64,000 nt of DNA from Haliotis rubra (Eukaryota), in NCBI RefSeq assembly GCF_003918875.1, contig NW_025767035.1, positions 1,488,001-1,552,000 on the forward strand, given 5' to 3'. The position numbers and the translations under genes are program-made. Under the pieces are notes generated by a model. It made no database searches and was not told where the DNA came from. It saw only the letters and a list, made by a program, of their open reading frames with translations. Shown here in pieces: positions 1,352-38,880 of this stretch (position 1 is its first letter; each line of letters starts with the position of its first letter).

Positions 1352-2854
1352 ATGGCGCTTCACGGTATAACTCTGGTTGCTGTCCTTGCTGGGCTTGTTC
1401 TTCTCACCTCAGCCCAGTACCACCGGTACCCGTACCGGGACCAGTACCGGGACCAGTACCGGGACCAGTACCGGGACCAGTACAGCTGCCAGCTTCCCAA
1501 GGACCCAGGTCATTGTTTAACCTCGATGCCCCGGTACTACTTCAACTACCGACTTGGTATATGCGAGAAGTTCATCTACGGAGGCTGTGCTGGCAACTCG
1601 AACAACTTCCACACTCTGACTGAATGCCGCGCTGTCTGTGGAGGTACGTGATGATACAGTACATGGTTGTATAGTTCTTCTGGGGTTCTTCTTACCCATC
1701 AGTCAATATCAACTGTGACTAAATTATTCATTGGGATTCGCTCAGCTCAAATTCATCTATTTCTGCATGTGTAATGATGAGTGTATGGTTGAATTTAATT
1801 TTACGCCGCACCCCAGCTATGTGGAGGCCTATAAGTCAGCGGTCTGTAAACCATCGAGTCTGGAGAAGACAATCCACTGATCAACAGCATGAGTATCGTC
1901 CTAACCTAAGCAGTTTGGATACGATGACAATTGTCAACCAGGTCAGCGAGCCTGTCCACCCTATCCCGTTAGTACCCTCTTACGACAAGCATGGGTTACT
2001 GAAGGTCTTCCCGGGTCGTGTCACTGAATCATGACATGGAGTGTAGCAAGTTATTCACACTATCATATTCCGAATATGTGAATACATACCTGGGATTTTT
2101 GTTTTCAGGGACTCTTCACATGTACAGGACAGACCTAATTCAAAATCATAATTATCGATTTTTCTTGTTTGTATATAAGTCAGTATCTCTCGTCCGTGGA
2201 TTAAGGTCAGGACTGGCCTGCCATATGGTGCCAATACTGTTGTGCAGCTTCAGGCTACAAACCCTTATTATTTGCCTACCTGTCCACCAGGGCACGGTGA
2301 CCCATTTCGCGAACACCTTTTGTCATCATTCATTTTCAGTGATCATCGCATGATTTTGCCCATTTCAACTGAATTAAAGAAGGAAGTGTTTAGCGATCTG
2401 TTATGCCTGGATAATTAAAGCATGCCGTCAAAATTCAACTGCATAAAATAGATATATTGCTGGTGCTTTATGACGACAGACATTGTATTAATATATAAGT
2501 AAATTTAGCAGCCTAAACTAAGAAAATTGTGACTGCCAAAATATAGATTGTGACGTCATCATTTACTGTGACGCACATGCGCAGAATAGAACCCGGCGAA
2601 CGTTTTCATCAAACTAGCACCTTTGCACCACCCTTCACATTTCACATGTTATTTGTAATTATACTTTGTCTGATTTTTTTTCAGGAGAAAACCTTTGTTT
2701 GCAACCTGTTCTTCAAGGTATTGGCCAGGGCTACTACCCTCGGTACTTCTATGACTATCAATCTGGCACCTGCCGAAGATTTGTGTACGGAGGGAGAGGG
2801 GGCAACTGCAACAACTTCCACACTCTTCAGGACTGTCAGTTCCAGTGCTGCTAA
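1352..2854 (+). CDS. K1: secreted double BPTI/Kunitz-domain protein, 153 aa; exons 1352-1643 and 2685-2854
   Basis: Signal peptide [21 protein letters not shown], then (YRDQ)x4, then Kunitz 1 [37 protein letters not shown]...C. A phase-1 GT-AG intron leads to Kunitz 2 [61 protein letters not shown] at 3001. Confidence 0.92.
1433..1483 (+). repeat. Coding 12-bp minisatellite (taccgggaccag)x4 encoding YRDQ repeats
   Basis: Four perfect units read directly from the sequence. Confidence 0.97.
1780..2017 (-). mobile_element. SINE-like family 2 copy in the K1 intron
   Basis: Reverse complement of the ~250-bp repeat at 40576-40832. Confidence 0.8.
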
Positions 2855-4418
2855 ACTGGAGGAAGCACCAATCAGAATGGGTTGCGGAAGTTCCTGGTGT
2901 TTCCGGCGAGCCAACTTTAACGTGGAGTCGCCATTGCATATTCAGATAGATATACTCTTACTACGACACTTGGTTGGAACACTACTCAAATATTTTCTAT
3001 AATAAATGTTATAAGTTATATCCGTACTTGTCATATATGTACAGCGCCTCCTTGGTCGAATGGACTGAGAGTCTGGAATTTGTTCAGTCTATCCCTTTTA
3101 TGTTAGGGTGCGATGTCCTCGAGGATTTACTCCCTAAATACTGTAATGTGCTCATCAGCTCAAACGGCACAAACGTCTTTCATTTGTACAAAATGGCGTT
3201 TCTTTATGTCGTCGCAGTTGCAAAGAGACGTTATGTTGACATATTAGCAACATTCATTTCACGACACACATTGAAACGATATACGCGTGACGTCAATCTA
3301 GGGTAAGACGCTGTTTATTATTTGGACAGCTACCTCAGTTTGAGTTAGCCAGATATGGACCAGATGGGCTAAATGTGGAAGTAGCACACATTCGAAAAGT
3401 TATACACGTTGCGTCAATCTAGGGCAAAACGTTGATTACTGTTTGGACATATTTCATGTTCTGGAGCTGCACCAAAACGAGGCTAAATGTTCAAACACCT
3501 AATTTGTGTTCAACCTGAATAAGGTTGCAGTTCGAAGACGATTACAAATGAGAGTGCTACGTCACAATAGCGCATTGAATCACGCCCTGACACATTTAGG
3601 TCATTATGAAGGAATGATGATCGATTGTCATTTGTGATGCCCTTGCACAAGGAAAACATGTCCTGTTATTACCTGATGACGTAGATTGTAGCTTAAGGCT
3701 GTTTAGGGGCGCAACAAGTCATCGATGTGACACTCTTGTCAAGCACTGGCTTAGAAGCTGTAATACATGCACATGAGCATTAATCAAGCACCACCCACCT
3801 TCTTTTTTGTGAGAAAACACTACATGATGTTTCATATGCTTTGAAATCCGAAACCGCATATTAAAATGGTATGTGTAAAATGTTAGGAGGAAATTTCAAA
3901 AATCTTAGACCTTTAGCCTTTCAGTGAAACTAGCGAGTTTGATACCGACAAAGCTAAAACATAATCGTTTTTAACCTTGCATTCGAACCTCTCAGAACAA
4001 AGACGACATGTATATTTCACGGTTATAAGGTGTTTAATGACTGTTGTACTTAACGACAATGATATATCATTTATTACCATGACATACACAATCAGTGTGT
4101 ATGATATATGAAGTATTGACAGTCACACAGTAAACGACAAGAGTTTCTCAGAATACTATAAAAATGCAATAAGTGGCTGGGTGAAAGATAAAGTCATCAG
4201 AAACGCGGACCCCAATTTTAATTCCAAAAGTATTTATATTTATATTTTAATCGCGAAAACAGTTTGACCATTATGCAAAATATTGTTTTTGCGTTAGTTT
4301 TCGCAATTAAACATACTTATACGTTGAGTAACCGTGTCATTACTAATGTGCTTGAGGCAAAGGGTGCACTAGTGCCATAACTTTATATATGACATTCTTG
4401 ACGTTTATACTGTCGTGG

Positions 4419-4647
4419 ATGAAAAAGTTTCGTATTGTGGTGTTTGGTTTCATTTGGTGTCAGGAACTGTTCATGGCGACAAGGTGTGTCACCAACACAT
4501 GAGACAGGGGGGATGTCGTCGTCGCTGCTGTCTATGGCATCACAGTTTAACACACACACACACGTCGGATGCAGTAATAGATGTAGTGGTTGCTGCGGAC
4601 GATGGATGAACTGGAAGGCGTCAATGACGGTAACTGTTGGAGACTAG
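4419..4647 (+). pseudogene. Perlinhibin-like secreted Cys/His/Arg-rich miniprotein gene with two frameshifts (pseudogene or assembly indels)
   Basis: Adding one T to the T-run at 4453-4455 and removing one CA unit from 4550-4563 gives MKKFRIVVFGFILVSGTVHG|DKVCHQHMRQGGCRRRCCLWHHSLTHTHVGCSNRCSGCCGRWMNWKASMTVTVGD*. TATA-like tttatatat at 4382-4390. Confidence 0.7.
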
Positions 4648-5015
4648 TCAATGTGTTTAGCAGTGACATGGTTTGGATGATGCACCTATAGATTCAGGTT
4701 GATGATCTTACTCGTCGGTTTGGCTTCATCTTGTAGTTTTGTTTGTAAAACAGTTGTTGTTTAACATCCCAGCTATATGGCGGCGGTCAGTAAATAATCC
4801 AGTCTGGACCAGACAATCCAGTGATCAGCAATATGCAAGTGGATATATTGAGGACGGAGCTCCCTCCGAACTACAGACGAACAAGCCACCTGTACATAGG
4901 GTAGTTAGTAAAGAAAAGAATCCATTAAGAATTACTATTTATTCACAGTTTTCATCCTGTCACCCTCCTTTTGCGTATTGTTTAAACTTTTAGCATCATC
5001 TTAAGGTCAGGACCA

Positions 5016-11333: not shown

Positions 11334-13055
11334 TGTGCCTTCTGCCCAAAGACCCTGGAAATTGTTATGGTTACTTCCTTAAGTACTACTTCAACAGCAG
11401 GACGTGTCTCTGTGAGAAGTTCGTGTACGGAGGGTGTCCGGGGAATGCCAACAATTTCGACACTCTAGAGGACTGCAGGCGTAGATGTGGAGGTAGAGTA
11501 CTTTAAACCGTTGACTTTCCCAAAAATTGACAGGTTTTTGCCAAAGTGTGTTTCAACACTACACCGTCACCCGTCACTAGACACACGTCAGTCGTGATTG
11601 AACGATGTTCCGGCGCACTGTCTTGATCAAATATCGTTTTAACTGTTATTAAGTTCAATGATATTGCATTTTAAAGATCATTGTTATCATGTTAACTAAT
11701 TTTAATACACTGTTCCATAAAAGATAGTTTTGTTGTATGTTAAAGTGATTTTATTTTATGAGGTACTATTATCATAGCGAAGTTATGTTATTACCGCTAG
11801 AGAAGTTAGCTTTAATACGCACATGAATACGAATCAGCTATTAGAGGTCACAAGTCCTGTCACCGGGTGTTTTTTATTTCGTGGTTCTTTTTTTTAAATT
11901 ACATTATGGGTAATAAATAGAATAACCAACTCGGTACGAGTGATTACGGGAAATATGTCCTATATGTACCTCGCTGGTTATTCTTTAAGTAATATGATAC
12001 ATTGTATTGTGTGAAATACGTAAAGGTTGTTACTTACAAATAGCAATGGGGGTAACCACATCTTTAAAGCGTTCGCTCGTCACGCCGAAAGCCTGGGTTC
12101 GATAACGTGTTTATAACGTGGAATATTGCGTTTAGCACGCACTCACTCACTATATTACTAATTTTCGGCAAATTGTATTAAAATGACAGAGGTACTTCCA
12201 GTGATTGTATAATTACTCAAACACATTATGTCCGTAATGATAGACGTTTTAAGTTTCCCGAAACCATAGGTCTGTTTGTGTTGAGGTACATACACATCCC
12301 TCTTGATTATAATTAGTTGGACATAATGAGAATGATAGAATTCTTTAGTGTCTACTACTTCAGCACATCTAAAAGGGGATTACACCATGGAAATACAAAA
12401 ATGAATTAATATAAGAAGACAAATGATAATGATATTGAAAATATAGAAAAATACATGCAAGGAAAGACAACTTACAAGTTACTTCTTTCTAAACCTCTCT
12501 TTAGTATAATTCATTTTATGGTTACAGTGTTTCTCATTATTCTATTCATAATATTCTTTGTTTAGATCGGGGATAATCTACAGCGTCTTCTATTCTCCCT
12601 GTTTAGATGTACGATATAACAATAGAACAATATCATTATTTATAAATTTATGTTTCCCTGGCGCTTTCTTGTGTTTTATGTTGCTGTTTTGTGTGCGCGT
12701 GCGTGGTTGTAGTTGTGATGGTGGTGGTGTGGTCGTCATAGTGTTGGTGTGCTCGTCATGGTGGTTGTTGTTGTGGTGGTGGTCGTCGTCATGGTGGTGT
12801 GGGTGGCGTTAATCTTGGTAGCTCTTCAACACGTTTTAATACAACATATTCCTCTCCCTTTCGTGTCCAGGCGGTGTCCTCTGCAGCCTCCCCAGAGATC
12901 CGGGTCCTTGTGACGATGACATCCCCAGATGGTGGTACAACAAACGTACAAACAGATGTCAGAGATTCAGCTATGGAGGCTGTGAGGGGAACGCCAACAA
13001 CTTTAAAACACTTTACGAGTGTCGCTTCCAGTGTCGGAGAGGATGGGCATATTAA
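11334..13055 (+). CDS. K2: double-Kunitz gene, exons 11334-11492 and 12871-13055; signal-peptide exon not found
   Basis: Both exons are open and phase-1 compatible: [120 protein letters not shown] near 13128. Confidence 0.82.
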
Positions 13056-14924
13056 GGCTTACATATCCTTAAACAATGTGCAGCTGTAACGAGAGCGTCT
13101 GTCCAGAAAGATTTGGACGTTGTAACCAATAAAACTCAATTGGTGTAATTCCCAGTGTGTTTTGTGATATGTTGAGAACCCAAAGTCAACCGGTTGTTTA
13201 ATGAGTCAAATATTTCTTTGTGTTGGTGCTTCACTTATAATTTGCCTGTTATAATATACCTTTGCGACCGATACAATGAACATACACATAAATATGCCCT
13301 GGGTGAAGGTTCCTGCAATGATACATACTAATACTGAAAATAAACACTGTTCCCGGGATATAAATATCACAGGTAGTCCAATCGGAATTTATTTAAGCGC
13401 ACAGGGCGATTAACGGGATCGGTTTGTTGAAGCATGTCATCGTATTCCAAATGTCAGTAACTGTAGTCCCCTGTCCAGACTCGATTACAGACCTCCACCA
13501 TGTTGCTGGAAAATTGCTGTCTGCGGCGTTCAACAGCACACACTACCGGTATAAAGATGTCCTTGCTACCGAAACCTTGTTTTCGTAGTGCTTACTTTAG
13601 GGACGAAGACTTCCCCAAACGGTTCAGCTGTAGCTTCAATTTATTTCATAGACATTCATGCACGTACGTCCAGGCATATAAACATTATCGTAAAACCAGG
13701 TTTGATTCTGTTCAGTCAAGTTGAGGGTACACAGCCATATGGATAATCAAGACTATGAACAACGTGAAGCATTTCCACTCGGTCTAACCCTCCACATTTA
13801 AACAGTTATGTTATATCCATTCTGTATAATGGTCATACATTTTCAAACAAGCATCAGAATTACCTTCCCTTATTATGGAACAGGCTGGTTATGTGTCATG
13901 ATATGAATATCGCCTTTGTAATATTTCTAGTTAAAGAGTCATAATTTGGATGGGGTCGGTGGAGTAGCCGAGTGGTTGAAATGTTCTCTCTTCACGCCCC
14001 AAAACCGGGTTCTATTGACCATGTGTCAACAATATTCCAGCAATATCACGGCGGGGGGACACCAGAAATGGGCTTCACAAGTTGTACCCATGTGGGGAAT
14101 CGAACCCGGGCCTTCGGCGTGACGAGCGAACGCTTTAACCACTAGGCTACCCCACCGCCCCACTCCATGCCAGGTGTCCTCTGCCGTGATATTGCTGGAA
14201 TACCGCCAAACACGGCTAAAACGTCATAAACCCATACTCGCCTACGCACTCATTCATTCACTTAATGCATTAAAAACAAAATCACATGTGTGTGTGTGCC
14301 CGTGCGTGCGTGCATTAGAAAAAGTCTCCCCAATTCCAATAACACATAAGTTTATAATGACCTCACCGCGAAATATACAACTTCAGTGTTGAGGCGAAAG
14401 ATACAGTGTTGTTTTATGCCGTTGTTTCCATAAATCAGGTCTACAACGGCATGTAGATAGCAAATTTTTCATGAATCTTGTCAATCGTATCAAAGGGGCC
14501 TACTCCAAAGATGTAATGATCATTATGCAGCTTATGTGACAGAAATGTAATTTTTTACATTAAAGTATATATTTTTACTAACGATCGATTCGCGCGATAG
14601 CCAATTGTTGATAAACTAAATTCAATGCATTTTCCTTAACAATTTTGGACAGTTACAAAATGTATTATGCTATTTTGTAAGAAGTAATTTGTAAGCAACT
14701 GCCTTTAGCCCATATTTCAGTTACACCCTGAAAGACAAACAGGATGTTTTGGAGACATTTTTTTGCCACAGTCCAAATATTGATATTCATTATTCATAAA
14801 GTGCACTCCTATCTTCCACGCCAGCGTGCTGAGATGTAACACGGAAATGCGTCCACTGTCATGGGAAAAAATAATAATATATCATTTATAATTGTTGCAT
14901 GTGGCACGCAATGAAAGCAGACCC

Positions 14925-14977
14925 TATATAAATGTCCTCACTATACCTATGTGCATCCTGTTGCCCGACGTTTGCCG
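14925..14977 (+). promoter_or_regulatory. TATA box and short non-coding exon 1 of K3
   Basis: TATATAAA at 14925-14932 and GTAGGT donor at 14978; same arrangement at 21037 in unit 2. Confidence 0.65.
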
Positions 14978-15536
14978 GTAGGTTTGAAATATATTTCTGT
15001 TTCTCTCATGCAAGTGGCCATCGGCCTCATACTGATTCACGTTTCGTTTCGTTACTCTACAGTATTCAGCATTCAGCCTCAGTACTTCTTAAGTTTTCAA
15101 GTAATCATGTCCAGAACATGACGTACGATACAGTTATGTATACATAACTTGTATCCTAATGTATCTTGGCTTGTTAATGATGAGGTCACCGGTCGGGCAG
15201 GGTACACGTTTTCACCCCTCATTATTCGACAGTTTTCTTATGATATAGTTGAATTTGTAGTGGACTTTCTTGTGATTATGGAAAGGGTTTTGACGTGTCT
15301 ACTTGTATGTCATGCCACTGACTGGAATATATACACTCTTGTATATCTGTACACATCCGTATTCAACAGTCACACATCTCGTCATTTCCAAGGGACGCAA
15401 CTCTTGACAGTGCAGTGCCTCGCTTCAAACGACAATGCCACCCTTGTCCTTCTGCCAGCTGGGTTTGGTGTTGGTATTGGTTGGTCTGACCTCAGCTAAA
15501 TATCATGATGGTAAGTACACCTTTCCTAGTTACCTA

Positions 15537-15750
15537 TTCATTTATACTAATATTTGTATAGCGCCAATATCCAGCTCAGCTGCTCAAAGCGCTTTGTGTT
15601 TCCCTCTATCACTGGATGTCAATTGTATTTGCAATCCCAACTCCCTGGGGATTATAGAACTCATGCAGCCACTAGGCACACCAAGTTAATGTAGCTTTCC
15701 CATCCCTACAGGGTACCCATTCACAGCTGGGTGGACTGGGACACATAGCC
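15537..15750 (-). mobile_element. Deu/Nin-domain-like SINE with an L2-type tail (duplicate at ~21673-21886)
   Basis: Minus strand reads ccagtccacccagctgtgaatgggtaccctg ... aagcgctttgagcag..ggcgctatacaaata, motifs I recognise from Deu/Nin SINEs and L2 3' ends. Confidence 0.6.
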
Positions 15751-16428
15751 ACATAACTTTGTCCACGTTTTACTACACGTTGCCGAAACCGAAACTAGGT
15801 GTTTGCTCGTATTTATGTGGCCACCATCTGGTCAATTACCAACGAATCCGTGGGTTCTTTTTCAGTGCACAGTGTTGTGTACTGTACACTAGCGGTTGTG
15901 ACAACACCGAAAGAGTCAGCACACATAGTTCATTCCAAGATTTTTACACCCGGTAACAAGTGGAATATTTATCTTTGGGAAAGAATTTACCAGCCTCCGT
16001 CTTTAATTACAGGATGATTAGTGCTTCATGCACTGTTGGAAATTAATATACACACCGTGATTTCAGTGTGCCAGCTGCCCAAAGACCCCGGTCCATGCAG
16101 AGCGTACTTCCAAAAGTACTACTTCAACAGCAGGACGTGTCTCTGTGAGAAGTTCGTGTACGGAGGGTGTGGGGGGAATGCCAACAGATTCGAAACTCTG
16201 GAGGACTGCAGGCGTAGATGTGGTGGTAGAGTAATGTGTAGTAATATATGTCTATTCCTTACGTGGGTATACCGTGTTGAGCCTTAATATTCCTGGATAT
16301 GTCTCTGTGTGTGTGCGTGCGCGTGTGTGTGGAAATTTTGGGTTAGTTCGTTAGTTTGGGTTATTGATTCCTCACATGGGTATAACGTGTTGAGCCAGGT
16401 GTCCCCGCCTTGATATTCCTGGATACGT

Positions 16429-16584
16429 GGGGCGGTGGGGTAGCCCAGTGGTTAAAGCGTTTGCTTTGCTCACGCTTGCTCGATTCCCCACATGGGTACA
16501 ATGTGTGAAGCCCATTTCTGCTGTCCAACGCCGTGATAGTGCTGTAATATTGCTAAAAGCGGCGTAAAACCAAACTCAGTCAGT
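16429..16584 (+). mobile_element. SINE family 1 in the K3 intron (duplicate near 22565-22720)
   Basis: Full-length copy flanked by the direct repeat tcctggatacgtg. Confidence 0.9.
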
Positions 16585-18554
16585 CCTGGATACGTGTGTG
16601 TGTGTGTTTGTGAAAGTATGGGTTAGTTATTGTATGAGGAGGGTGGTGGTGGTGTTAATCTTGGTGGCTCTTCAACAGGTTGCATACATGTTTCTCTCCC
16701 CTCTAGGCGGCTACCTCTGCAGCCTCCCGTAAGATCCGTGACGGTGACTTCCCCAGATGGTGGTACAACAAACGTACAAACAAATGTCAGAGATTCATCT
16801 ATGGAGGCTGTGAGGGGAACGCCAACAACTTTCAAACACTTTACGAATGTCGTTTCCAGTGTCGGAGAAGATCGACATATTAAAACTTACATATCCTTAA
16901 ACTATATACAGTCGTAACACCGGCGTCTGTCCAGGAAGAATTGTACGTTGTAACCAATAAAACCTGTTTGAAGTAATTACAAGTGTGTTATGCTGAGTAC
17001 CCAAAGTCAACCGGTTCTTTATTAAGTCGAATATTTCTTTGTCTTGGTGCTTTACTTATAATTTGGCCTTTGCAACCGATACGATGATGCATGACAGAAA
17101 TATGCTCTTGATGAAGGTTAATCCAATGATACACACTGATAATACTCACTGCTCCCGCGACATGAATATCACAGGTATTACTGTGTAGTCCAATCGGAAT
17201 CTATTACAGTGCACAGGGCGACTAACGGGATCGGGTGGTTGAAGCAGGTCATCGTATCCCAGTTTCAATAATGGATGCTCATGATGTCGATCATTGAACT
17301 GTCTGGTCCAGACTCGAATACATGCAGCCGTCATGTGGCTGGAAAATTGCTGATGACGGCGTTAAACAACAAACAGTATTAAGAATTCCACCGGGCAGTC
17401 GGACAATTCTGTACTTGGGATGCAAACTGCATTTCGCAGTTGAGGTCCGCACATCTGTCATAGGGGACAGACAATGTCATGATATTACTGATTTCATTTG
17501 TTTTATATACATGTAAAAGGACATGGCTGTGTGCAGGACTATTCCAAATACGTTTCATAATTGTCATGTTTCCTTTATACATATTGGGTCGTAGCATGGA
17601 TGGCGCCAAAACCACATAGTGCAGATGGAACAGTGCTGAGTTCAACGTTAAACAACAAACAAACACTAAGAGATAAGCATCAAATACCTTTCTTTAGCCA
17701 AATGGGGACGGTGGGGTAGGCTCGTGGTTAAAGCGTTCGCTCGTCACGCTGACGACCCGGTTCTCTTCACCACATGGACAAACTGTGTAAAGCCCATTTC
17801 TGGTGACCCCGCCGTGATATTGCTGGAACATTGCTAAAAGTGGCGTAGAACCAAACTCACTCACTCACTCACTCTTTAGCGAAATACATGACGTTTATAT
17901 GTATACTGTACATGAATGTCAACAGAATAAGAGGTGATTCATTTTTAAGAACTTTTTTTTATTGTACGATCATATGAGACACAAAAATAATGAGAGGCGT
18001 AGGAACGCTTTTACCACTAGGGTACCCCAACGCACTTGTCATGAGGGATCATTACATCTGTAAAGAACACACCAAAAAGTAATTATACATAACTGATGTA
18101 TTTTTACGGAAGATGTATAATATATCATATAGAGTACTGTATAGTCATCTGTTTTGAAATCATTATTAAGTACAGTCTGTAAGTGTACATTATTACCTAA
18201 AATGATAATGAAATTACTGTACAAAACACTTGACTTAAAACACTTGGCATTTGACTTCAAACAAATTTCCAAGTCCTTGTTTGTAAACAGCTGACATGTA
18301 TGTCATTAAAGCGATCACAAAAATATATACACGAAGCGAAATTCTAACGTTATCCTTGATTTATTACTAGACAGAATGTCACTGAAAGTCCTTGTTACCC
18401 TTAGAGACCCCCACAAATCATGCTGTAAAACACTTTGGGCAACATTTAGGGTTTATAAAGCAGCGAGTCCTCTATTTGGATTGACATAACAAAAACATAT
18501 AAGAAAATATTGGCTTTTTCCAGATTTGCTCCAGAATATTCCTTTCGTGTCCAG

Positions 18555-18737
18555 GCGGTGTCCTCTGCAGCCTCCCCAGAGATCCGGGTCGTTGTGACGA
18601 TGACATCCCGATGGTGGCACAACAAACGTACAAACAGATGTCAGAGATTCAGCTATGGAGGCTGTGAGGGGAACGCCAACAACTTTGAAACACTTTACGA
18701 GTGTCGCTTCCAGTGTCGGAGAGGATGGGCATATTAA
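18555..18737 (+). pseudogene. Orphan duplicate of the K2 terminal Kunitz exon
   Basis: Near-identical to 12871-13055 but with a 2-nt deletion (atccc[ca]gatgg) that shifts the frame; lies at the duplication junction with no upstream exons. Confidence 0.9.
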
Positions 18738-23031: not shown

Positions 23032-24225
23032 AACTTACATATCCTTACACTATATACAGTCGTAACACCGGCGTCTGTCCAGGAAGAATTGTACGTTGTA
23101 ACCAATAAAACCTGTTTGAAGTAATTACAAGTGTGTTATGCTGAGTACCCAAAGTCAACCGGTTCTTTATTATGTCGAATATTTCTTTGTCTTGGTGCTT
23201 TACTTATAATTTGGCCTTTGCAACCGATACTATGATACATGACAGAAATATGCTCTTGATGAAGGTTACTCCAATGATACTCACTGATAATACTCACTGC
23301 TCCCGCGACATAAATATCACAGGTATTACTGTGTAGTCCAATCGGAATCTATTAGTGCACAGGGCGACTAACGGGATCGGGTGGTTGAAGCAGGTCATCG
23401 TATCCCAGTTTCAATAATGGATGCTCATGATGTCGATCATTGTATTGTCTGGTCCAGACTCGAATACAGACAGCCGTCATGTTGCTGGAAACTTGCTAAT
23501 GTCGGCGTTAAATAACAAACAAACAAACAGTATTAAGAATTCCGTACTTGGGATGCAAACTGCATATCGCAGTTGAGGTCCGTATATCTGTCATAGGGGA
23601 CAGACAGTGTCATGATATTACTGATTTCATTTGTTTTATATACATGTAAAAGGACATGGCTGTGTGCAGGACTATTCCAAATGTGTTTCATAATTGTCAC
23701 GTTTCCTTTATACATGTTGGGTCGTAGCATGGATGGAGCCAAAACCACATAGTGCAGATGGAACAGTGCTGAGTTCAACGTTAAACAACAAACAAATACT
23801 TTGAGATAAGCATCAAATACCTTTCTTTAGCCAAATGGGGACGGTGGGGTAGGCTCGTGGTTAAAGTGTCGCTCGTCACGCTGACGACCCGGTTCTCTTC
23901 ACCACATGGGCAAACTGTGTAAAGCCCATTTCTGGTGATCCCGCCGTGATATTGCTGGAATATTGCTAAAAGTGGCGTAAAACCAAACTCACTCACTCAC
24001 TCTTTAGCGAAATACATGACGTTTATATGTATACTGTACATGAATGTCAACAGAACTTTGTTTATTGTACGATCATATGAGACACAAATATAATGAGAGG
24101 CGTGGGAACGCTTTTACCACTAGGGTACCCCAACGCATTTGTCATGAGGGATCATTACATCTGTAAAGAACACGCCTAAAAGTAATTATACATAACTGAT
24201 GTATATTTACGGAAGATGTATAATA

Positions 24226-24392
24226 CTGACTGGCTGAGTTTGGTTTTACGCCGCTTTTAGCAATATTCCAGCAACATCACGGCGGGGGACACCGGAAATG
24301 GGCTTTACACATTGTACCCATGTGGGGATTCGAACCCGGGTCTTCGGCGTGACGAGCCAACCCTTTAACCATTAGGCTACCCCACCGCCCCC
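24226..24392 (-). mobile_element. Young SINE family 1 insertion specific to duplication unit 2
   Basis: 12-bp TSD agatgtataata; the empty site is present in unit 1 near 18110-18122. Confidence 0.93.
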
Positions 24393-26764
24393 AGATGTAT
24401 AATATATCATATAGAGTACTGTATAGTCATCTGTTTTGAAATCATTATTAAGTACAGTCTGTAAGTGTACATTATTACCTAAAATGATAATGAAATTGCT
24501 GTACAAAACACTTGACTTAAAACACTTGGCATTTGACTTCAAACAAATTTCCAAGTCCTTGTTTGTAAACAGCTGACATGTATGTCATTAAAGCGATCAC
24601 AAAAATATATACACGAAGCGAAATTCTAACGTTATCCTTGATTTATTACCAGACAGAATGTCACTGAAAGTCCTTGTTATCCCTTAGAGACCCCCACAAA
24701 TCATGCTGTAAAACACTTTGGGCAACATTTAGGGTTTATAAAGCAGCGAGTCCTCTATTTGGTTGTCACAACAAAAACATATAAGAAAATATTTGCTTTT
24801 TCCAGATTTGCTCCAGAATTGAAGGATATGACATTGATCTTGCACCTGAAGATGTTTACCCACATGTATTTACGATGCAGGAATAACCTCATTGAAAAGC
24901 AATATCTGGTTACAAAACGGCATGATGTAATGCAGTTTTGGGATACAATTGAAAATGCTTGGCAACCTTGAAAACGACCAAAATCACAAGAGTTACATCC
25001 GTAAATGTATTATTTGCATAATGGCGAATCTGTTAGGTGTCTTCTAATACCAAATACATGGCGCTATACCTATAATTACTCAGCAGTTAACAAAGATGCA
25101 AAGTAAAACATTGAATTTCAAGCAAAAAAAGCAACAAATCAGATTACTGTGACCAGTGCTTCGAGCAACACAAGCAAGCTTAAGACTGATTAAATGTCTA
25201 TTCACAGTGAAGAATTGTCCCTTCATATATAGCAGTGTTCTATCTAAAAAAGCAAGGTTACCATGGAAACGTTAAAAACGGCAGGAGGGCTGACACTTTC
25301 AAATATGGCGACATTGGTTTTAGACATTGGAAACTACAGATTCCAGACTTTCGGACCATATCAATCAAATCTTGCTATACCTCCGGTAGACGTGTTTCAA
25401 TTTACCAGAAACCACTGGGCGGCCATGGTGCAGGCATTGCCTGGGTCAGTGAGTCGCCAGCGCCGCATACATCGAGAACCAGACCGAGGTCTATTTGCGT
25501 AAATGGGTGAACAGCATCTGTTATGCATGTGTAAGTGACGGACAGCTGCAAATTATGAAATGTATTTTGCAATCAGTATCCACAATCTACGGTTGTTTAC
25601 GGGGAATGGGGGTGTACCTGTTGACCGTATGTTGACTTGTGGGAAAGTGTTGGATAAAATCCAGATATGTGATCGTTACTACGTCGACGAATGTTTCCGC
25701 TGTATAAAGTGAAACCTGTCTACCTCTGTTGAGGGACGCGATGTAGATATGATTTTTTATACATATGGAACGGACACGCAAATGAATTTTATTTGATTTG
25801 TTATTAATTAAACAACGACTACTAAATGCAGCGTAGATATGAAAAGGTGGAAAAATCAACTATCATGAACTAACTGTACGATCATTCACAATTCTAACCT
25901 GCTCGAACAGATTTCTAGCTTAAACTCTGTGTTTCGGTTTGGAATCAACCTGTATGTATGTCTAAAATCCCGATCAGTTTCATCGCCTCTAACGACCATC
26001 ATAAGTTGCTGGGCCCTTCTCTCGATTCTGAATCGTTACGGAGACTTTAAAATCCTGCACTGGTGACGGAGCTGTCGACACTAGAGGCCATACATGTCAC
26101 TTTATCGCAGTGTGACGGCCATGGTGCGCACTTAGGTCCAAGAAGTGGCAGCTGAATCGACACCATTCACGAAGAATTACTATACTAAGGTTTCACTACA
26201 CAAGTTTGTCTGATAACATTTGACCGAGTTATACATGATCCAGTAACTACACAGGCGGATCCAGAGAGGGTGCGGGGATGCGCTGTATCTGCCCCTGAAC
26301 AAAATCCGTTTATTATCTCCGCCGACGGCCGAGAGAGTTTTGATGAGTTTATGTCCGCTTCAGTCACTAAATCTTTGCGTCATGTGAGAAAATACGAGTC
26401 GGAATGTGATGTGAACACTTCGATTCAAGTACTGCCTTATAAGATTGAACATCTAAGGAACAAAGTCCCAGGATGTGTTAAATTGCAGTGTTCACAGTCT
26501 GACACATCACACTCAGTACTGTGTGCACTGGACATTACCTTACAATACAAGATTTCAATATTTGTTTCAGCAGTCTTGTCCGATCTCAGAATTGGCTGGC
26601 ATGGTGGGTTGAAATAGATAGAATTTATTTGTTTTTATTCTTGTGTTCCTGGCCTTGGAGCTGACTGAAATACAGATTTTATTGTCACAATGTCGGGAAC
26701 TTAGTAACGGGTAACTGTTCATGCCATTGACCATTGCTCCTGCTGTCAACCACTGGGTAACAGG

Positions 26765-29627: not shown

Positions 29628-30587
29628 TCAGAAAGGTTCACTCTTGTCGAATTCAGGATGCCTGTGTGCCCATTCATTTGTAAAATATTTTACAGTGTTG
29701 TCTAGCTTAAGCAGCTTCTCAAAATCACTTGATGACAACTTCCAGTCAAATATATCCAGATTGTCTTTAATTCTCTCGAAATTTTGACTCTTAGGTAAAA
29801 CACCCATACCCTTAAGCAATAAGAAGTTTAACAATATCTGTCCTGGAGTCTTTTTGTACTCAAACGATAATTGTTTCACTTGTGGATCTTCAAGCAGCAC
29901 CAGATCTTCTGGCTTTTTATCAGGCTTAGATGGTGCACCTAGTGGTGAATATGCAGTAAGTATAATGTTTTTCTCTCCACAAAACTCAACAAGCTTCTTC
30001 TGCTGCCAGTAAGCATGTGCCTCGAGTTGAAGATTTGCAGGCTTGATTTTAGCTTTGTCCCATATCCTCTGAATCTGTTCTGGGTTGAAGTTAGATACTC
30101 CAATGCTTTTGGCCCAATTCTGACCATGCATCTGTTCAAAGGCAGACCATGTTTCCAGAAGGTCGTGATGCTTCAACTCACGTTCTCCTTTCGAATTGAG
30201 AGGTTTGAGCGTTCCAACCCCTCTGTTGACATTACCCCAAGGTTGGTGAATTAACAACAAGTCGACATGTGTTTGTTTGAGACTTTCTAGCGACATTTCG
30301 GCACTTTTGATCGCTGCATCTCTTTCCAAATAAGCACATGGTACTTTTGTTGTGATAAACAAATCTTTCCTTTTATTTTTCCCAGCCCTAATCCTATCTT
30401 TAATGACCTCGCCCACTTCAACTTCGTTACCATAGCTTAGCGCTGTGTCGATATGTCTGTACCCCAGGAACAGAGCGTAATCGACCGCCCTTTTCAATGC
30501 GTCACCTTTCATAAGATAGGTTCCAAGCCCGACAGCGGGCATACGTAGGCCATTATTCATAGACAAATAGCTCATAATAGACGCCAT
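29628..30587 (-). CDS. Intronless aldo-keto reductase (AKR1-like), 319 aa
   Basis: MPAVGLGTY, GYRHIDTALSYGNE, LFITTK, DLLLIH, KSIGVSNF, AYSPLG and LPKS motifs; catalytic Asp-Tyr-Lys-His tetrad present; single uninterrupted ORF. Confidence 0.96.
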   Translation of the reverse strand: MASIMSYLSMNNGLRMPAVGLGTYLMKGDALKRAVDYALFLGYRHIDTALSYGNEVEVGEVIKDRIRAGKNKRKDLFITTKVPCAYLERDAAIKSAEMSLESLKQTHVDLLLIHQPWGNVNRGVGTLKPLNSKGERELKHHDLLETWSAFEQMHGQNWAKSIGVSNFNPEQIQRIWDKAKIKPANLQLEAHAYWQQKKLVEFCGEKNIILTAYSPLGAPSKPDKKPEDLVLLEDPQVKQLSFEYKKTPGQILLNFLLLKGMGVLPKSQNFERIKDNLDIFDWKLSSSDFEKLLKLDNTVKYFTNEWAHRHPEFDKSEPF

Positions 30588-34638: not shown

Positions 34639-37600
34639 TCAATATACAGGCTGTTGAACACGCCGACACACGCGATGGCACTCTTGCAGAGTTTTGAAGT
34701 TGTTGGCGTTGCCACCACAGCCGCCGTATAGAAACTGCTCACACTGGCCGCTGGCAGGGTTGAAGAAGTAGCGACGGAAGGCAGCCCGACAACGTCCGAT
34801 CACCATCGGAAGACTGCAATTGTCTGGAACAGACGTATCAAAGACATGATTTGGAGGTTAGGTGATAACTCTCTTCGGTATTTGAACGATGTATTTATTT
34901 CGTGACCAACATCGTGTTATCGTGTTATCGTACAAGCCGAATAGGGATCTTATTGCGGGTTGCGGAAAGAGGCGAGTGCTGATGGATATTTCCCAAAACT
35001 TTCAAAAGAGCAGTAACTCTCTTTTTAATGTGACAAAACTAAATGTTGTTATCCACCCTTGCTGATATCGCACTCGTAAGAAACACATCTGTAAATAGCG
35101 TTGGTATACCTACCATCAACCATGACGGGTCTGCGTGTAGGGCGGACACCACCGTATGTGTGGAATGCAGGAACACACACAGTTCTTCCATAGCGCTCCA
35201 CGCACCGGGAATTCTTTCCACATCGCGTGAACTGTAATATTTGATGCATACATTATGTTTGTTTGCCTCTATGTTTGTTTCTTGTTTAACGCCGTGCTTG
35301 CAATTTTTCAGCTGTAACAAAATGAGTCTGGACCAGACAATCCAGTGACTGATATCATGAGCATCGATCTACTCCGCTGGGATACTGCAACATGCATCAG
35401 ATATTACACCCAGGCTCGTCACTACCCGTTAGTCACCTCTTACGAAAAGCATGGGTTTCTGAAGACCAGTTCTAAAACAGGTGTCGCGAAAAACACTCAT
35501 TTACTCACATTGTTTACACAATGTTCAGCGTAATACACAAGCAAGCGTTAAAGAACGTATACTGTTTAGTATTAATTTAGAACTTTACCCGAAGATGCAA
35601 TATAACATACGCGTTATCTTTGTATGCAATTATAAACATATCTGAAAATAGTGAGCGAACTGTATTTCATTTTTTTTTTTCAACTAGAAAACAAATGTTG
35701 AAGAATAGCCCGCAGATGTTTCAGAAAAATGATAAGAAAATAATGATCACTGTTTTACAAACCAATAATCACAAACAAAGCTAATATTATTGATAACATT
35801 ATTGAAATTACGACAATATATCGCCGTGCCTAATGCCCTTGCCCGTGGCCATGCCACAACAATCAATCATTTCTGCTGAAAAGGTCTACTCCCATTTGTG
35901 AGAACTCCCAGTTGTGAGACTCCCAGTTATGAGACAGTGGAGTAGGTAATTAACAACGAAAACACACCATGCTCCCCTGTCTGATAGAATGGATTCACCC
36001 TAGCTAATTACTGATTTGCTATGTAACTGAATCTTGTGGAGGTAACTTAATGAAACTTTATAGGATAAATTGATTAACATACTCAGGTAAATGTCTTTAA
36101 TAATTAAACACTTTGTGTAGGTAACTTCGTGATCAAAGAGAAATTAATTTACCTACTCAGATTTACTCCGTCTCCGAAACTACAAGCTATAGTTTGAGAA
36201 ATAACTCTGAAATTACTCTGAAATTTACAGTCGAAATGCCCCTTATGCCAAACCCTTTCTACCCGACACAATACATTTAGTGAATGCCCTACCAAATTCC
36301 AAAGAGTCATGCAGTCTCAAAGAATTTTAAAACCTAATTACAAAAAAACGAAAACAAGATTTATATTGATCTTATATATTTTTGAACGGAAACAAAGAAT
36401 TTACTCCTTGTGTAAACCAGAAAATAGTTGAATCCGTCCACGATTATATCATCAAGACACAACCTTCATGTTTCACAGGGAAATACTGAAATTAACTCAA
36501 TCTTCTCGTGATTGATTTATATTAATTATTACAATAGATTGTTACTTAGAGAATAGTTGTATTTGATGTAATCTGTATATATTTATATGTATAAAATAAA
36601 AATGTGTTATCATAATTACATATTCTTCTGAATAAATAAAATACTCAATGAACTATGCCTCCTGTGGGTACTGGGCTGGGCTGATCCCACTTTCATTGTA
36701 GGGATGTGGAAACACCACCTATGTGCACTGAACCATTAATTAATGTGTCTCACAACTGGGAGTTCTCACAAATGGGAGGACACCGCTGAAAATACTACCC
36801 ATCAAAAGTTTAGACTCACTTAAAGCACTCACTATATATATATATATATACACATAACATATATTCATGTGTAAACAGTACTTTTAAACAGTATGGAATA
36901 TTTTGCATATCTAGTTTAGAACAGTTGACTGAAGTAAGTGGCTACATCTACACTAGTGAGTCTAAACATTTGATGGGTATATAGGAAAATACTGATTAAT
37001 CATTTGCTACTTCCTTACCAAGCAGCGTGGTGAGACTTTGGGGTGTGTCCTGTCGCTGGGGTTGTCCAGCAGGCTGCCACCAAGGCTGGGCCACGTGTTA
37101 CACTTACACTCTCCGGGGACCATACCATTGAGGCAAAACAACAAGCATCTTGGAACCGGTTCTGAAAACACGAGTGATTTCTGTGAAGTAACACTACGAT
37201 TCGACTACGGATTCTTTAGATGAAGATGTGATTCCAAACTTTATATCCTTGACATTACCGATTATTATCGTCGTTCAATATGTCTCCAACTACGGTGAAA
37301 TCGAGTTACTAATGTCTTTATAAGACTGATCGCACAGTGATGGAGATGTTCATGGAATGAATATCAGTCATAAGCGCACCTGTCCACAGGATCATAAGAT
37401 GCCAAAAGTAAATACCAATTAACCAATAGTTTGAAATAGGTATGCCGAAAAGTGTCAGTATGAGAAAGGCAGGTCAGTCTCATGCATTACAAATTTATGA
37501 TTTTTCCTGTCGTACTGCATCCGTATACCGGTTCAGGGCCAACTGTTCATTTGGTCAGAATGGGGCGTATTTGTGTACTTTCGTTTACCCGGAAAATTGT

Positions 37601-37831
37601 AACAATGTCCACTTGGCATTAGCGCTAGGAATGATTGTTATTTAATCGACCGCAAACTTTGTTGAAAGTTTAGGAATTAAAAAATTGTAAGCCACAATGA
37701 AATGCAACCGCTTTGAGAAAAGAATGGTCTTTGGAAACGAAATTGAAATGGTCAATGTACGTACCTATAAACGAACTCGCTTCAACTGCGGCGAGAACAG
37801 CAATGGCACACAGGACTGTTTTGATGTCCAT
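34639..37831 (-). CDS. K5: secreted 170-aa protein, signal + 4-Cys module + FOLN-like 4-Cys module + Kunitz; exons 37831-37765, 37161-37019, 35231-35114, 34823-34639
   Basis: Four GT-AG exons with matching phases (1,0,1): [170 protein letters not shown]. Confidence 0.88.
35883..36784. mobile_element. ~900-bp non-autonomous DNA transposon in a K5 intron
   Basis: Inverted repeats ctcccatttgtgagaactcccagttgtgagac, GG..CC ends, 8-bp TSD GCTGAAAA (Merlin-like features; superfamily uncertain). Confidence 0.85.
36795..36979. mobile_element. Tc1-type MITE
   Basis: TIR tacccatcaaa(a/t)gtttagactcact at both ends, flanked by TA. Confidence 0.8.
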
Positions 37832-38644
37832 ATTGTTATCTGCAACAACAAACGTTGGGATAGTTTATGACCTTTCGTTTCATCTGACACAACGCCTTAG
37901 ACCATGTGTCACCTGTCAGTCACAACGGTACAGGTGTCTCCGACTGTGAGGTAAGTGTGGCTTAGCGTGCTAGGGGAACGTTTGTCAGTAACACCCTCAG
38001 GTAAATATGTACTTGCACTTACTCTTGCATTCTTTGAGCTTATAATAAAAAATTCTTCTGTACGAAAATCGGTCAGATATATTATTTTAGAAATATAGAT
38101 GAGATTGAAGAATTTACTAGTTTGTGACTTTGAATAAGTTAGTTGAATCTAACTAAAATATAGTTAAAGGTATAATTGTATAAGGCGACCTGTGTGTCTT
38201 TATGTGTTTATCATCTTCAAGAAGGAAACCGGACGGGCCGGCGAACCAAAGACAATATATCACGTTTTCACAAGTCTTGTTACTTGTTTTATGATAATGC
38301 TAATAATGTTTAAATTTATGTTCCCTCGGAATTTTATTTGAAATAAATATAGTTCAATGATGATCAAGCTGAGCTAGCGAGGGGGTATGAGAGTGCAAGA
38401 GTAAGGGTATTGTTTCATCATATCGGGGCATTAATATTCGCAGTACCGAGAACAATTGAGATAGAAAACCATATTTTAATTCACATCGGAATGAAATTCA
38501 GGGTGGGCAGGAGGCGGGTTACTCAAAACAAATATGGACAACGTAAACCGCAAAACTGAAATGAGATTTATCATAACGTACAGATGGGTCTAATTCATTA
38601 TACATGTGTACTTAAATAATTGAAATATTATATTTAAATCATAC

Positions 38645-38880
38645 CTGGTCGTTGTAATATGTCGACACCGTGCGAGATTCGGCAGAAAGGTCTTGTTATG
38701 AGAATCAAGTCGCTGTCAGCGTCTTTATATACACCAGATAGGTAATAACTTGGGAAACTATACACAGAGTGTCACGACAAGTAAACGTTTTCTGAATTCT
38801 GATTGGTTGAAGAGATGTGACGTCAGCTGTCCATGTCTGACATGTCATTCTTCAAGTGAGTTGTCTCCTGCATGCGTCAG
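38645..38880 (-). promoter_or_regulatory. K5 non-coding exon 1 (~38700-38645) and promoter
   Basis: Minus-strand TATATAAA at 38731-38724, cag|GTATGA donor at 38644, CCAAT near 38802-38806, palindromic CRE TGACGTCA at 38818-38825. Confidence 0.7.

What the first reader, a model, noticed from the sequence alone, without database searches (positions are those of the whole stretch)
1352..38731. Putative abalone shell-matrix gene cluster: five Kunitz genes plus a perlinhibin-like gene
Seen: within 38 kb there are K1-K5 and a Cys/His/Arg miniprotein gene. All but the 5'-incomplete K2 have a signal peptide and a TATA-like box, and K1, K3, K4 and K5 share a short non-coding first exon. From memory: K4 closely matches a double-Kunitz protein reported from the Haliotis asinina shell proteome, and perlinhibin is an H. 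laevigata nacre protein. Inference: a physically linked biomineralisation locus pairing a crystal-growth modulator with diversified protease inhibitors that protect the organic matrix. I do not know of this linkage being described.
Basis: partly seen in the sequence, partly recalled or inferred. Interest (0 to 1): 0.85.

Follow-up and report, generated by a model that had tools for sequence, protein, structure and literature searches.

The report
Abalone shell Kunitz-inhibitor gene cluster
This stretch of the blacklip abalone genome holds a tandem family of Kunitz protease-inhibitor genes, three of them copies of the known shell-matrix protein KCP, but the proposed perlinhibin-like partner gene finds no support, so this is an ordinary, already annotated gene family.

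Summary
The window is Haliotis rubra contig QXJH01000036.1 (GCA_003918875.1), positions 1488001-1552000.

**Kunitz genes: confirmed.** The five genes are real. There are seven intact Kunitz domains (Pfam E 1e-16 to 1e-21), one with changed cysteines, and two dead second-domain exons. NCBI already annotates these genes.

- **X, Y and Z** are tandem copies of the known shell protein KCP. Z is about 84% identical to H. asinina KCP.
- Mass-spectrometry peptides from H. laevigata shell match X and Z exactly. This suggests the three KCP "variants" in that proteome are separate neighbouring genes.
- **State in this assembly:** X has no signal-peptide exon, Y's second domain carries a stop and an 8-bp deletion, and only Z is fully intact.
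- The reactive-site (P1) residue differs among domains: L, Y, D, R, R, A, R.
- The order K1, KCP, KCP is kept in H. rufescens.
- **K1 and K5:** none of the tryptic peptides I searched for was found in the held files of the H. laevigata shell proteome.

**Perlinhibin-like gene: not supported.**

- Its Cys/His/Arg bias comes largely from two simple DNA repeats.
- It has no homologue among 1.84 billion proteins, and no counterpart in the syntenic H. rufescens interval.
- No contig from the two probable RNA runs covered it.
- It partly overlaps the first exon of NCBI's model for gene X, in another frame.
- I could not obtain the perlinhibin sequence for a direct comparison.

Mantle co-expression could not be tested.

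The parts
953..2854 (+). Gene K1, 153 aa. TATA at 953. Predicted non-coding exon ends at 1008. Exon 1348-1643 (ATG at 1352) encodes the signal peptide, a (YRDQ)n repeat and Kunitz domain 1. Exon 2685-2854 encodes Kunitz domain 2, which has lost Cys2 and Cys4 and carries two extra Cys.
   Evidence: NCBI product of 153 aa over 1352-2854. H. rufescens orthologue P0003, 154 aa, 66% identical to the first-exon query.
4157..4609 (+). The 'perlinhibin-like' candidate. TATAAAA at 4157. Formal exons 4273-4327 and 4464-4609 give 67 aa. Cys/His/Arg-rich frame at 4463-4606. Simple repeats (GTC)3(GCT)2GTC at 4515-4532 and (AC)7 at 4550-4563. Judged not to be a gene.
4602..4629 (+). First coding exon of NCBI's 123-aa model for gene X (MDELEGVND, no signal peptide). 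It is read in a different frame from the Cys/His/Arg frame and joins to 11334.
   Evidence: P0001 sequence and gene range. Coordinates read.
11334..13055 (+). Kunitz-a exon 11334-11492 (P1 Tyr). Kunitz-b exon 12871-13055 (P1 Asp). No promoter, first exon or signal exon is present in this assembly.
   Evidence: 111 of 114 residues identical to H. laevigata shell protein CLC_148 (by eye). Peptides DPGNCYGYFLK and CGGGVLCSLPR are exact matches.
14925..16885 (+). TATA at 14925. Exon 1 ends at 14977. Signal exon 15370-15510 (ATG at 15435). Kunitz-a exon 16067-16225 (P1 Arg). Second-domain exon from 16707 has an in-frame TAA after 8 codons and an 8-bp deletion.
18541..18737 (+). Orphan copy of X's Kunitz-b exon, left by the roughly 6-kb tandem duplication. 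It carries a 2-bp deletion that shifts the frame.
21037..23110 (+). TATA at 21037. Exon 1 ends at 21089. Signal exon 21506-21646 (ATG at 21571). Kunitz-a exon 22203-22361 (P1 Arg). Kunitz-b exon 22847-23031 (P1 Ala). AATAAA at 23105.
   Evidence: 5'UTR splice matches H. laevigata transcript comp84928. Shell peptides [31 protein letters not shown] and [12 protein letters not shown] are exact matches. About 84% identity to KCP_HALAI (by eye).
12857..24819 (+). Tandem duplication of a roughly 6-kb unit: copy 1 is 12857-18540 and copy 2 is 18541-24819, 94-98% identical. It produced Y and Z and the orphan exon.
29628..30587 (-). Intronless aldo-keto reductase gene (319 aa). It lies between the KCP genes and K5 and is not part of the family.
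34639..38731 (-). Gene K5, 170 aa. TATA at 38724-38731. Predicted non-coding exon ends about 38643. Signal exon 37839-37765 (ATG at 37831). Two Cys-rich exons, 37161-37019 and 35231-35114, with no Pfam match. Kunitz exon 34823-34639 (P1 Arg).
   Evidence: NCBI product of 170 aa over the same range.

Best explanation
This is a tandem family of secreted Kunitz-type serine-protease-inhibitor genes in Haliotis rubra.

**The KCP genes.** The middle three genes (X, Y, Z) are recent tandem copies of KCP. KCP is the double-Kunitz protein already known as a major component of both the nacre and the prismatic layers of abalone shells. Each Kunitz domain sits on its own exon, flanked by phase-1 introns, so exons and whole genes duplicate easily. 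A roughly 6-kb duplication made Y and Z.

**Divergence and decay.** The copies differ mainly in the reactive-site loop, which decides which protease a domain binds. P1 residues are Arg, Tyr, Ala and Asp. The copies are also turning over. In this assembly X has lost its promoter and signal-peptide exon, Y has lost its second domain, and Z is fully intact.

**Shown and inferred.** Shown here: domain identity, gene structures, orthology to shell-proteome proteins, and synteny with H. rufescens. Inferred: the proteins are secreted by the mantle, built into the shell matrix, and inhibit a range of serine proteases there. That would either protect the matrix or control its processing.

**Flanking genes and the Cys/His/Arg frame.** K1 and K5 are more distant Kunitz genes with no shell evidence of their own. 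The Cys/His/Arg-rich open frame at 4463-4606 is most likely non-coding sequence whose composition reflects simple repeats. At most it is part of a 5' exon captured by the damaged gene X.
For: - **Source.** The window is identical to H. rubra QXJH01000036.1.
- **Domains.** All eight domains pass Pfam Kunitz_BPTI at E 1e-16 to 1e-21.
- **Annotation.** NCBI products named 'BPTI/Kunitz domain-containing protein-like' cover K1, X, Y+Z and K5.
- **KCP match.** The H. asinina KCP sequence is about 84% identical to Z, with the same two-domain layout and the same C-terminal RRSTY.
- **Shell peptides, gene X.** The H. laevigata peptides DPGNCYGYFLK and CGGGVLCSLPR match X exactly. The peptide YHDVCLLPK matches only at its last six residues; YHD comes from the signal exon that X lacks here.
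- **Shell peptides, gene [32 protein letters not shown] and [12 protein letters not shown] match Z exactly.
- **Published context.** Mann et al. 2018 (PMC6003135) list CLC_148, CLC_77 and comp84928 as major proteins of both shell layers. They note that these could be different gene products.
- **Duplication.** Tandem duplication at 94-98% identity.
- **Substitution pattern.** Y and Z differ at 5 of 153 bases in Kunitz-a, all non-synonymous and three of them in the reactive loop, while the signal exon shows 0 differences in 76 bases. X-b and Z-b differ by 15 non-synonymous and 2 synonymous base changes.
- **P1 spread.** Shown in the domain alignment.
- **Synteny.** K1-like, KCP-A and KCP-B lie on one strand within 26 kb in H. 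rufescens.
- **Against the miniprotein.**
Against: - Mantle expression in H. rubra was not tested. The H. laevigata KCP transcript comp84928 comes from a haemolymph and tentacle database (caption), so expression is not mantle-only.
- Protease inhibition by KCP has never been assayed, to my knowledge.
- The excess of non-synonymous changes rests on small counts and is not statistically significant on its own.
- Contigs of run X1, probably from the same species, differ from the window by about one indel per 500 bases, at places the tool did not show. Some apparent gene damage could therefore be assembly error. A nonsense substitution plus an 8-bp deletion is unlikely to be.
- X's missing signal exon conflicts with its H. 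laevigata orthologue, where peptide YHDVCLLPK shows that the exon is used. It could be a real deletion, a haplotype difference or a misassembly.
Confidence: 0.8

Rival explanations
1. This is a co-regulated biomineralisation locus in which a perlinhibin-like crystal-growth modulator gene (about 4157-4609) is linked to five shell-matrix Kunitz genes.
For: - A formal model exists: TATA box, signal-like exon, intron, then a Cys/His/Arg-rich exon.
- The 48-aa frame has 7 His, 4 Cys and 4 Arg, with acidic residues balancing the basic ones (sequence).
- Joining it to the next frame across the (AC)7 repeat would give 8 Cys.
- One undisplayed indel lies somewhere in 4236-4795 in the X1 contigs.
- The segment at 4401-4600 is single-copy.
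Against: - No protein shares three 5-residue words with it.
- phmmer against 1.84 billion representatives returned only a spurious repeat protein from a moth.
- No Pfam match.
- H. rufescens homology stops at about 4155 and resumes at 5536, so the segment is not conserved.
- No contigs from the probable RNA runs X9 and X10 lie on it.
- NCBI annotates only a 28-base first exon of gene X here, in another frame.
- Substitution divergence from organism B is about 3.3%, the same as in flanking non-coding DNA (table 8).
- The Arg/Cys run and the His/Thr run are read from simple repeats.
- The model is one of 37 formal splice combinations.
- None of the K1 or K5 peptides searched for appears in the held H. 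laevigata shell proteome files.
Confidence: 0.04
2. The 4160-4629 segment is a real, newly captured 5' exon of gene X. After X lost its own promoter and signal exon, transcription starts near the TATA at 4157 and splices from 4629 to 11334. The Cys/His/Arg frame is then an upstream open reading frame. The Kunitz product is either non-secreted or untranslated, so X is on the way to becoming a pseudogene.
For: - NCBI's model P0001 joins 4602-4629 to the Kunitz-a exon in the correct phase.
- H. rufescens keeps promoter, exon 1 and signal exon exactly where H. rubra has the replaced segment.
Against: - I could not see whether RNA-seq supports NCBI's intron; the pipeline may have added the exon only to find a start codon.
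- No RNA contigs lie on the exon in runs X9 and X10.
- The H. laevigata orthologue clearly uses a canonical signal exon, although organism B's DNA also carries the 4175-4776 segment.
Confidence: 0.15
3. This is a general-purpose cluster of protease inhibitors for immunity or haemolymph. Some products end up in the shell only incidentally, and none has a dedicated role in mineralisation.
For: - The H. laevigata KCP transcripts comp84928 and comp51373 were assembled from haemolymph and tentacle libraries.
- Fast change in the reactive loop is typical of inhibitors facing pathogen proteases.
- No peptide searched for from K1 or K5 was found in the held shell proteome files.
Against: - KCP variants are among the major proteins by abundance in both shell layers of H. 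laevigata, and are present in H. asinina shell.
- The H. asinina EST came from libraries of calcifying tissues.
Confidence: 0.2

Closest known systems
[quoted passage not shown] 2010, PMC2989941)
   Same: - Two consecutive Kunitz domains follow a signal peptide ending ...GLTSAKYHD.
- It has the same extra Cys in domain 1 (TCLCEKF) and the same C-terminal RRSTY.
- Identity to gene Z is about 84% by my count.
   Different: - It comes from a different species.
- H. rubra has three tandem copies with different reactive-site residues, and two of them are damaged in this assembly.
H. laevigata shell KCP variants CLC_148, CLC_77 and comp84928 (Mann et al. 2018, PMC6003135)
   Same: - CLC_148 matches gene X at 111 of 114 residues over the Kunitz exons.
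- Peptides of CLC_77 match gene Z exactly.
- The spliced 5'UTR of comp84928 matches the exon 1 to exon 2 junction of Y and Z.
   Different: - The paper pooled the three as variants of one protein, while allowing that they might be different gene products. Here X and Z occupy separate neighbouring loci.
- CLC_148 has a signal peptide that gene X lacks in this H. rubra assembly.
H. laevigata minor prismatic-layer protein CLC_1047 / comp51373 (53.7% identical to KCP according to the paper)
   Same: It has the same layout as K1. Its second Kunitz domain carries the same two extra cysteines (GNCNNF and a C-terminal extra Cys).
   Different: It is clearly a different gene from K1, at roughly 60% identity by eye, and it is not encoded in this window.
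Perlinhibin (H. laevigata nacre miniprotein; Mann et al. 2007)
   Same: The only shared feature is a loose enrichment for Cys, His and Arg.
   Different: - No sequence match was found.
- The frame has 4 Cys, against 8 Cys in 41 residues for perlinhibin (figure from memory of the abstract).
- There is no evidence that it is expressed.
- I could not obtain the perlinhibin sequence for a direct alignment.

Membership tests
Kunitz/BPTI (Pfam PF00014) | Profile match above the curated cut-off (21 bits) | tested here: met
   Eight domains score 58-77 bits, E 9e-16 to 2e-21.
Kunitz/BPTI (Pfam PF00014) | Six cysteines with canonical spacing | tested here: met
   Seven domains pass the spacing pattern. 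The eighth (2687-2851) lacks Cys2 and Cys4 and has two extra Cys.
KCP shell-matrix protein group | Signal peptide followed by two Kunitz domains | tested here: met
   - Fully met for Z.
- X has both domains but no signal exon.
- Y has the signal exon and domain 1 only.
KCP shell-matrix protein group | More than 80% identity to KCP_HALAI, the level the paper gives for the major KCPs | tested here: met
   Z is about 84% identical to the sequence. This is a by-eye count of 18 differences in 114 positions, not a computed alignment.
KCP shell-matrix protein group | Protein physically found in the shell | tested here: inconclusive
   Exact peptide matches come from the H. laevigata shell. No H. rubra shell proteome was available.
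KCP shell-matrix protein group | Expression in mantle | not testable with these tools
Perlinhibin | Sequence similarity to perlinhibin or perlinhibin-related protein | tested here: inconclusive
   No hit in the word-based search or in phmmer against 1.84 billion representatives. I could not confirm that the 41-residue perlinhibin is in those libraries, and the paper (PMC1929040) is not held.
Perlinhibin | Miniprotein of about 41 residues with 8 Cys, 7 His and 6 Arg (from memory of the 2007 abstract) | tested here: not met
   The 48-residue frame has 4 Cys, 7 His and 4 Arg. Eight Cys appear only if two reading frames are joined across the (AC)7 repeat.
Perlinhibin | Expressed, secreted product | tested here: inconclusive
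   No contigs from two probable RNA runs. No NCBI gene model. No peptides in the shell proteome supplements.
Perlinhibin | Inhibits calcium carbonate crystallisation | not testable with these tools
   This needs a bench assay.

The most novel reading that the evidence does not exclude
The single-copy segment at 4160-4629 is shared with organism B of the run search, probably H. laevigata, but absent from the syntenic H. rufescens interval. It might encode a real, lineage-specific Cys/His/Arg-rich secreted miniprotein. Its true frame could be hidden by an assembly indel or by length variation in the (AC)n repeat. If so, this could be the never-cloned gene of perlinhibin or of the perlinhibin-related protein, lying next to the KCP genes.
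Probability: 0.03. Interest if true: 0.7.

Novelty: new member of a known kind. Interest (0 to 1): 0.3.

Why it matters
The useful result is modest. Mann et al. 2018 pooled three KCP "variants" from abalone shell as one protein. Two of them, CLC_148 and CLC_77, match separate, tandemly duplicated genes here (X and Z). These genes differ chiefly in the residue that sets protease specificity.

- This makes the old and untested idea that shell Kunitz proteins inhibit particular proteases directly testable, domain by domain.
- It shows gene gain and loss within the family.
- It removes a tempting but unsupported claim that a perlinhibin gene lies beside the Kunitz genes.

Tried and rejected
- **Perlinhibin paper.** I tried to read it (PMC1929040) to get the sequence, but it is not held. 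Two other papers that cite perlinhibin do not give the sequence.
- **Searches with the Cys/His/Arg frame.** The word-based search found nothing. phmmer found only a repeat protein of Spodoptera littoralis that matches the HTHT stretch 13 times, which I rejected as low-complexity noise.
- **Frame argument, corrected.** I first thought no in-frame signal-like exon could be spliced to the Cys/His/Arg frame. Enumeration showed that 37 formal GT-AG models exist, including 4273-4327 + 4464-4609. I therefore dropped that argument and rely on the other evidence.
- **Assembly indels.** I considered that a homopolymer or (AC)n assembly error might join the frames. The X1 contig has one indel in 4236-4795, but the tool did not show where.
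- **RNA evidence.** The run search for 4380-4660 returned only runs of unrecorded kind from organism B.
- **Signal exon for gene X.** I looked for it across the whole window and found none.
- **H. rufescens counterparts of K5 and the reductase.** I looked in the 10 kb downstream of KCP-B and found none. The locus may simply not reach far enough.
- **First Pfam call.** It failed on a frame error and was repeated correctly.

Full report
**Source of the window.** The H. rubra protein P0001 was found with the second Kunitz exon of gene Z. Its genomic locus L001 comes from GCA_003918875.1, contig QXJH01000036.1. From its position 5400 onward, L001 is base-for-base identical to the window. The window is therefore Haliotis rubra (blacklip abalone), contig positions 1488001-1552000. 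Contigs of run X1, probably from the same species, agree with it apart from about one indel per 500 bases. The tool did not show where these indels lie.

**What is in the sequence.** A cysteine-spacing scan of all six frames finds seven intact Kunitz domains. Pfam confirms them, plus an eighth altered one, at E 9e-16 to 2e-21. I built gene models from canonical splice sites:

| Gene | Window range | Product | State in this assembly |
|---|---|---|---|
| K1 | 1352-2854 (+) | 153 aa | intact; second domain has changed cysteines |
| X | 11334-13055 (+) | two Kunitz exons | no promoter, first exon or signal exon |
| Y | 15435 to about 16885 (+) | signal peptide plus one domain | second domain dead |
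| Z | 21571-23031 (+) | 139 aa | fully intact |
| K5 | 34639-37831 (-) | 170 aa | intact |

K1 and K5 have exactly the product lengths that NCBI's annotation gives over the same ranges. NCBI also has a 123-aa model for X and a 280-aa model that fuses Y and Z.

In X, Y, Z and K5, and for K1's second domain, each Kunitz domain is a single exon preceded by a phase-1 intron. K1's first domain shares an exon with the signal peptide. The exon at 2685-2854, which a separate note treats as a Kunitz domain with a rewired disulfide set, is the last exon of K1.

**Duplication history.** A self-comparison shows a roughly 6-kb tandem duplication: 12857-18540 against 18541-24819, at 94-98% identity. It copied the last exon of X together with a whole gene. 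The present order is X, Y, an orphan copy of X's last exon (18541-18737), then Z.

- The orphan exon has a 2-bp deletion.
- Y's own second-domain exon has CCG TAA where Z has CCC AAA, followed by an 8-bp deletion. Y can therefore encode only a signal peptide plus one Kunitz domain.

**Gene X lacks its 5' end.**

- The signal exon ([24 protein letters not shown] in H. laevigata) is found by tblastn only at 15444 and 21580.
- In H. rufescens, the first KCP gene has a TATA box, a non-coding exon ending ...CCCGACGTTTGCCG|GTAGGT as in Y and Z, and a signal exon.
- Homology between H. rufescens and the window runs up to about 4155 and resumes only at 5536, which corresponds to the intron just after the H. 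rufescens signal exon.
- About 6.6 kb holding the promoter, first exon and signal exon has therefore been replaced in H. rubra by about 1.4 kb of other sequence. This is the segment that holds the "perlinhibin-like" frame.
- The H. laevigata orthologue does use a canonical signal exon. The nacre peptide YHDVCLLPK spans the junction.
- Whether the H. rubra state is a real deletion, one haplotype or a misassembly is open.

**Link to the shell.** Marie et al. 2010 (PMC2989941) identified a double-Kunitz protein in H. asinina shell from EST P0012N13_463. Its sequence is in their Table S1.

- Against gene Z I count 18 differences in 114 aligned positions, about 84% identity. The signal-peptide end (GLTSAKYHD), the extra cysteine in TCLCEKF and the C-terminus RRSTY are the same.
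- Mann et al. 2018 (PMC6003135) found three sequences about 83% identical to KCP among the major proteins of both nacre and prismatic layers of H. laevigata: CLC_148, CLC_77 and comp84928. [quoted passage not shown]
- CLC_148 is identical to X over the whole Kunitz-a exon and differs at 3 of 60 positions in Kunitz-b.
- The sequenced peptides DPGNCYGYFLK and CGGGVLCSLPR match X exactly.
- [31 protein letters not shown] and [12 protein letters not shown], all assigned to CLC_77, match Z exactly.
- The 5'UTR of comp84928 reproduces the junction of Z's non-coding exon 1 (ending at 21089) with exon 2 (starting at 21506), with one residue of difference when both are translated. This verifies the short non-coding first exon.
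- At least two of the three proteomic variants therefore correspond to separate neighbouring genes.

**K1 and K5.**

- Searches of the same supplements for tryptic peptides of K1 and K5 found nothing. Several of those files are truncated as held, and the species differ.
- A minor prismatic-layer protein, CLC_1047/comp51373, has K1's layout, including the two extra cysteines of the second domain. It is a different gene.
- K1 has a clear orthologue in H. rufescens (P0003, 154 aa, 66% identical to the first-exon query). That orthologue keeps all six canonical cysteines in domain 2.
- K5 carries two Cys-rich exons without a Pfam match before its Kunitz exon.
- An intronless aldo-keto reductase gene separates K5 from Z.

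**Diversification.**

- P1 residues are Leu (K1), Tyr (X-a), Asp (X-b), Arg (Y-a, Z-a), Ala (Z-b) and Arg (K5).
- Between the young duplicates Y and Z, the Kunitz-a exon has 5 differences in 153 bases. All five change the amino acid, and three lie in the loop just after Cys2. The signal exon has none in 76 bases.
- X-b and Z-b differ by 15 non-synonymous and 2 synonymous base changes.
- The counts are small, but the pattern is the one usual for inhibitor families under diversifying selection.
- In a tree of the exons, the three H. rubra Kunitz-a exons group together, apart from the two H. rufescens ones (support 98/99). This means duplication, or homogenisation, within each lineage.

**Synteny.** On H. 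rufescens contig JALGQA010000003.1, three genes lie on one strand within 26 kb:

- the K1 orthologue at 56471039-56473754;
- a 164-aa KCP-like gene at 56479944-56487101;
- the 147-aa P0002 at 56491429-56496990.

Neither K5 nor the reductase was seen in the 10 kb beyond.

**The "perlinhibin-like" gene.** The strongest Cys/His/Arg-rich stop-free segment in the window is 4373-4606, with the rich part at 4463-4606. A formal model exists: TATAAAA at 4157, ATG at 4273, donor at 4327/4328, acceptor at 4463/4464, stop at 4607-4609, 67 aa. The evidence against it being a gene is as follows.

- It is one of 37 formal GT-AG solutions in about 600 bases.
- No ATG-started continuous frame in 1-39 kb reaches comparable richness.
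- The Arg/Cys run is read from (GTC)3(GCT)2GTC at 4515-4532, and the His/Thr run from (AC)7 at 4550-4563.
- No homologue turned up by word search. phmmer against 1.84 billion representatives returned only a spurious moth repeat protein. There is no Pfam match.
- The segment is absent from the syntenic H. rufescens interval.
- Organism B's DNA contig differs from it by 20 substitutions and 24 gap letters over 602 bases. That is about 3.3% substitutions, as in the non-coding stretch 1988-3805, against 1.9% for the contig that includes the K1 coding exon (table 8).
- No contig of the probable RNA runs X9 and X10 lies on 200-1800 or on 2200-4600, apart from depth-under-2 traces in two bins (3401-3600 and 4201-4400). 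This evidence is weak, because those runs are small, are only guessed to be RNA, and come from the other species.
- NCBI's model for X starts at ATG 4602 in a different frame and splices from 4629 to 11334.

I could not obtain the perlinhibin sequence, so a direct alignment is still missing. From memory of the 2007 abstract, perlinhibin has 41 residues with 8 Cys, 7 His and 6 Arg. The frame here has 4 Cys, 7 His and 4 Arg in 48 residues.

**Mechanism.**

- *Shown:* these are Kunitz-domain genes. X and Z are orthologues of proteins physically found in abalone shell. They arose by tandem duplication and differ at the reactive site.
- *Inferred from established knowledge of the Kunitz family:* each domain binds the active site of a serine protease through the loop after Cys2, with P1 setting specificity. 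Arg suits trypsin-like enzymes, Tyr and Leu chymotrypsin-like ones, and Ala elastase-like ones. Asp is unusual and possibly non-inhibitory.
- *Inferred from the papers' discussion:* in the shell they protect the organic matrix from proteases or regulate its processing. No assay exists.

**Verdict.** The observation of five Kunitz genes is sound, and the KCP match is correct. The "perlinhibin-like" half of the interpretation, and with it the claimed novel pairing, is not supported. What remains is an ordinary, already annotated tandem inhibitor family, with a small new point about the genomic basis of the KCP variants.

Noticed in passing
window 2685-2854: K1's second Kunitz domain has lost both Cys2 and Cys4, the partners of one disulfide, in H. 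rubra. The H. rufescens orthologue P0003 keeps them. Both species, and the H. laevigata shell protein CLC_1047, carry two extra cysteines (GNCNNF and a C-terminal extra Cys).
   Followed up: partly
window 1413-1480: K1 has a (YRDQ)n repeat between the signal peptide and Kunitz domain 1. Organism B's DNA contig lacks 24 bases here (two repeat units, in frame), so the repeat number varies.
   Followed up: no
window 15505-23031: NCBI's 280-aa model fuses genes Y and Z into one product starting at an internal ATG. This is probably an artefact of Y's broken second-domain exon.
   Followed up: partly
window 29628-30587 (-): Intact intronless aldo-keto reductase gene (319 aa, Pfam E 2.5e-46) sits between the KCP genes and K5. 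It is annotated by NCBI.
   Followed up: partly
window 51258-51824 (+) and 41441-41944 (+): An open frame with a fibrinogen C-terminal domain (E 3e-32) and another with a PAN domain (E 6e-7). These are probably exons of unrelated genes.
   Followed up: no
window 57186-59523 and 59590-61666: Two satellite arrays: a 23-base unit in about 100 copies with strong C-over-G skew, then a 56-base unit in 37 copies at 96% identity.
   Followed up: no
window 1-6000: Contigs of run X1, probably from the same species, each differ from the assembly by 1-2 indels per 400-1100 bases and by no substitutions. This suggests residual indel errors in the assembly, so small frameshifts in this genome need checking before being called real.
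   Followed up: no
window 5045-5240 and 5715-6289: A palindromic MITE-like element and a 115-base tandem repeat lie inside the segment that replaced gene X's 5' end. SINE-like high-copy elements lie at 1-184, 1800-2000 and 4770-5000.
   Followed up: no
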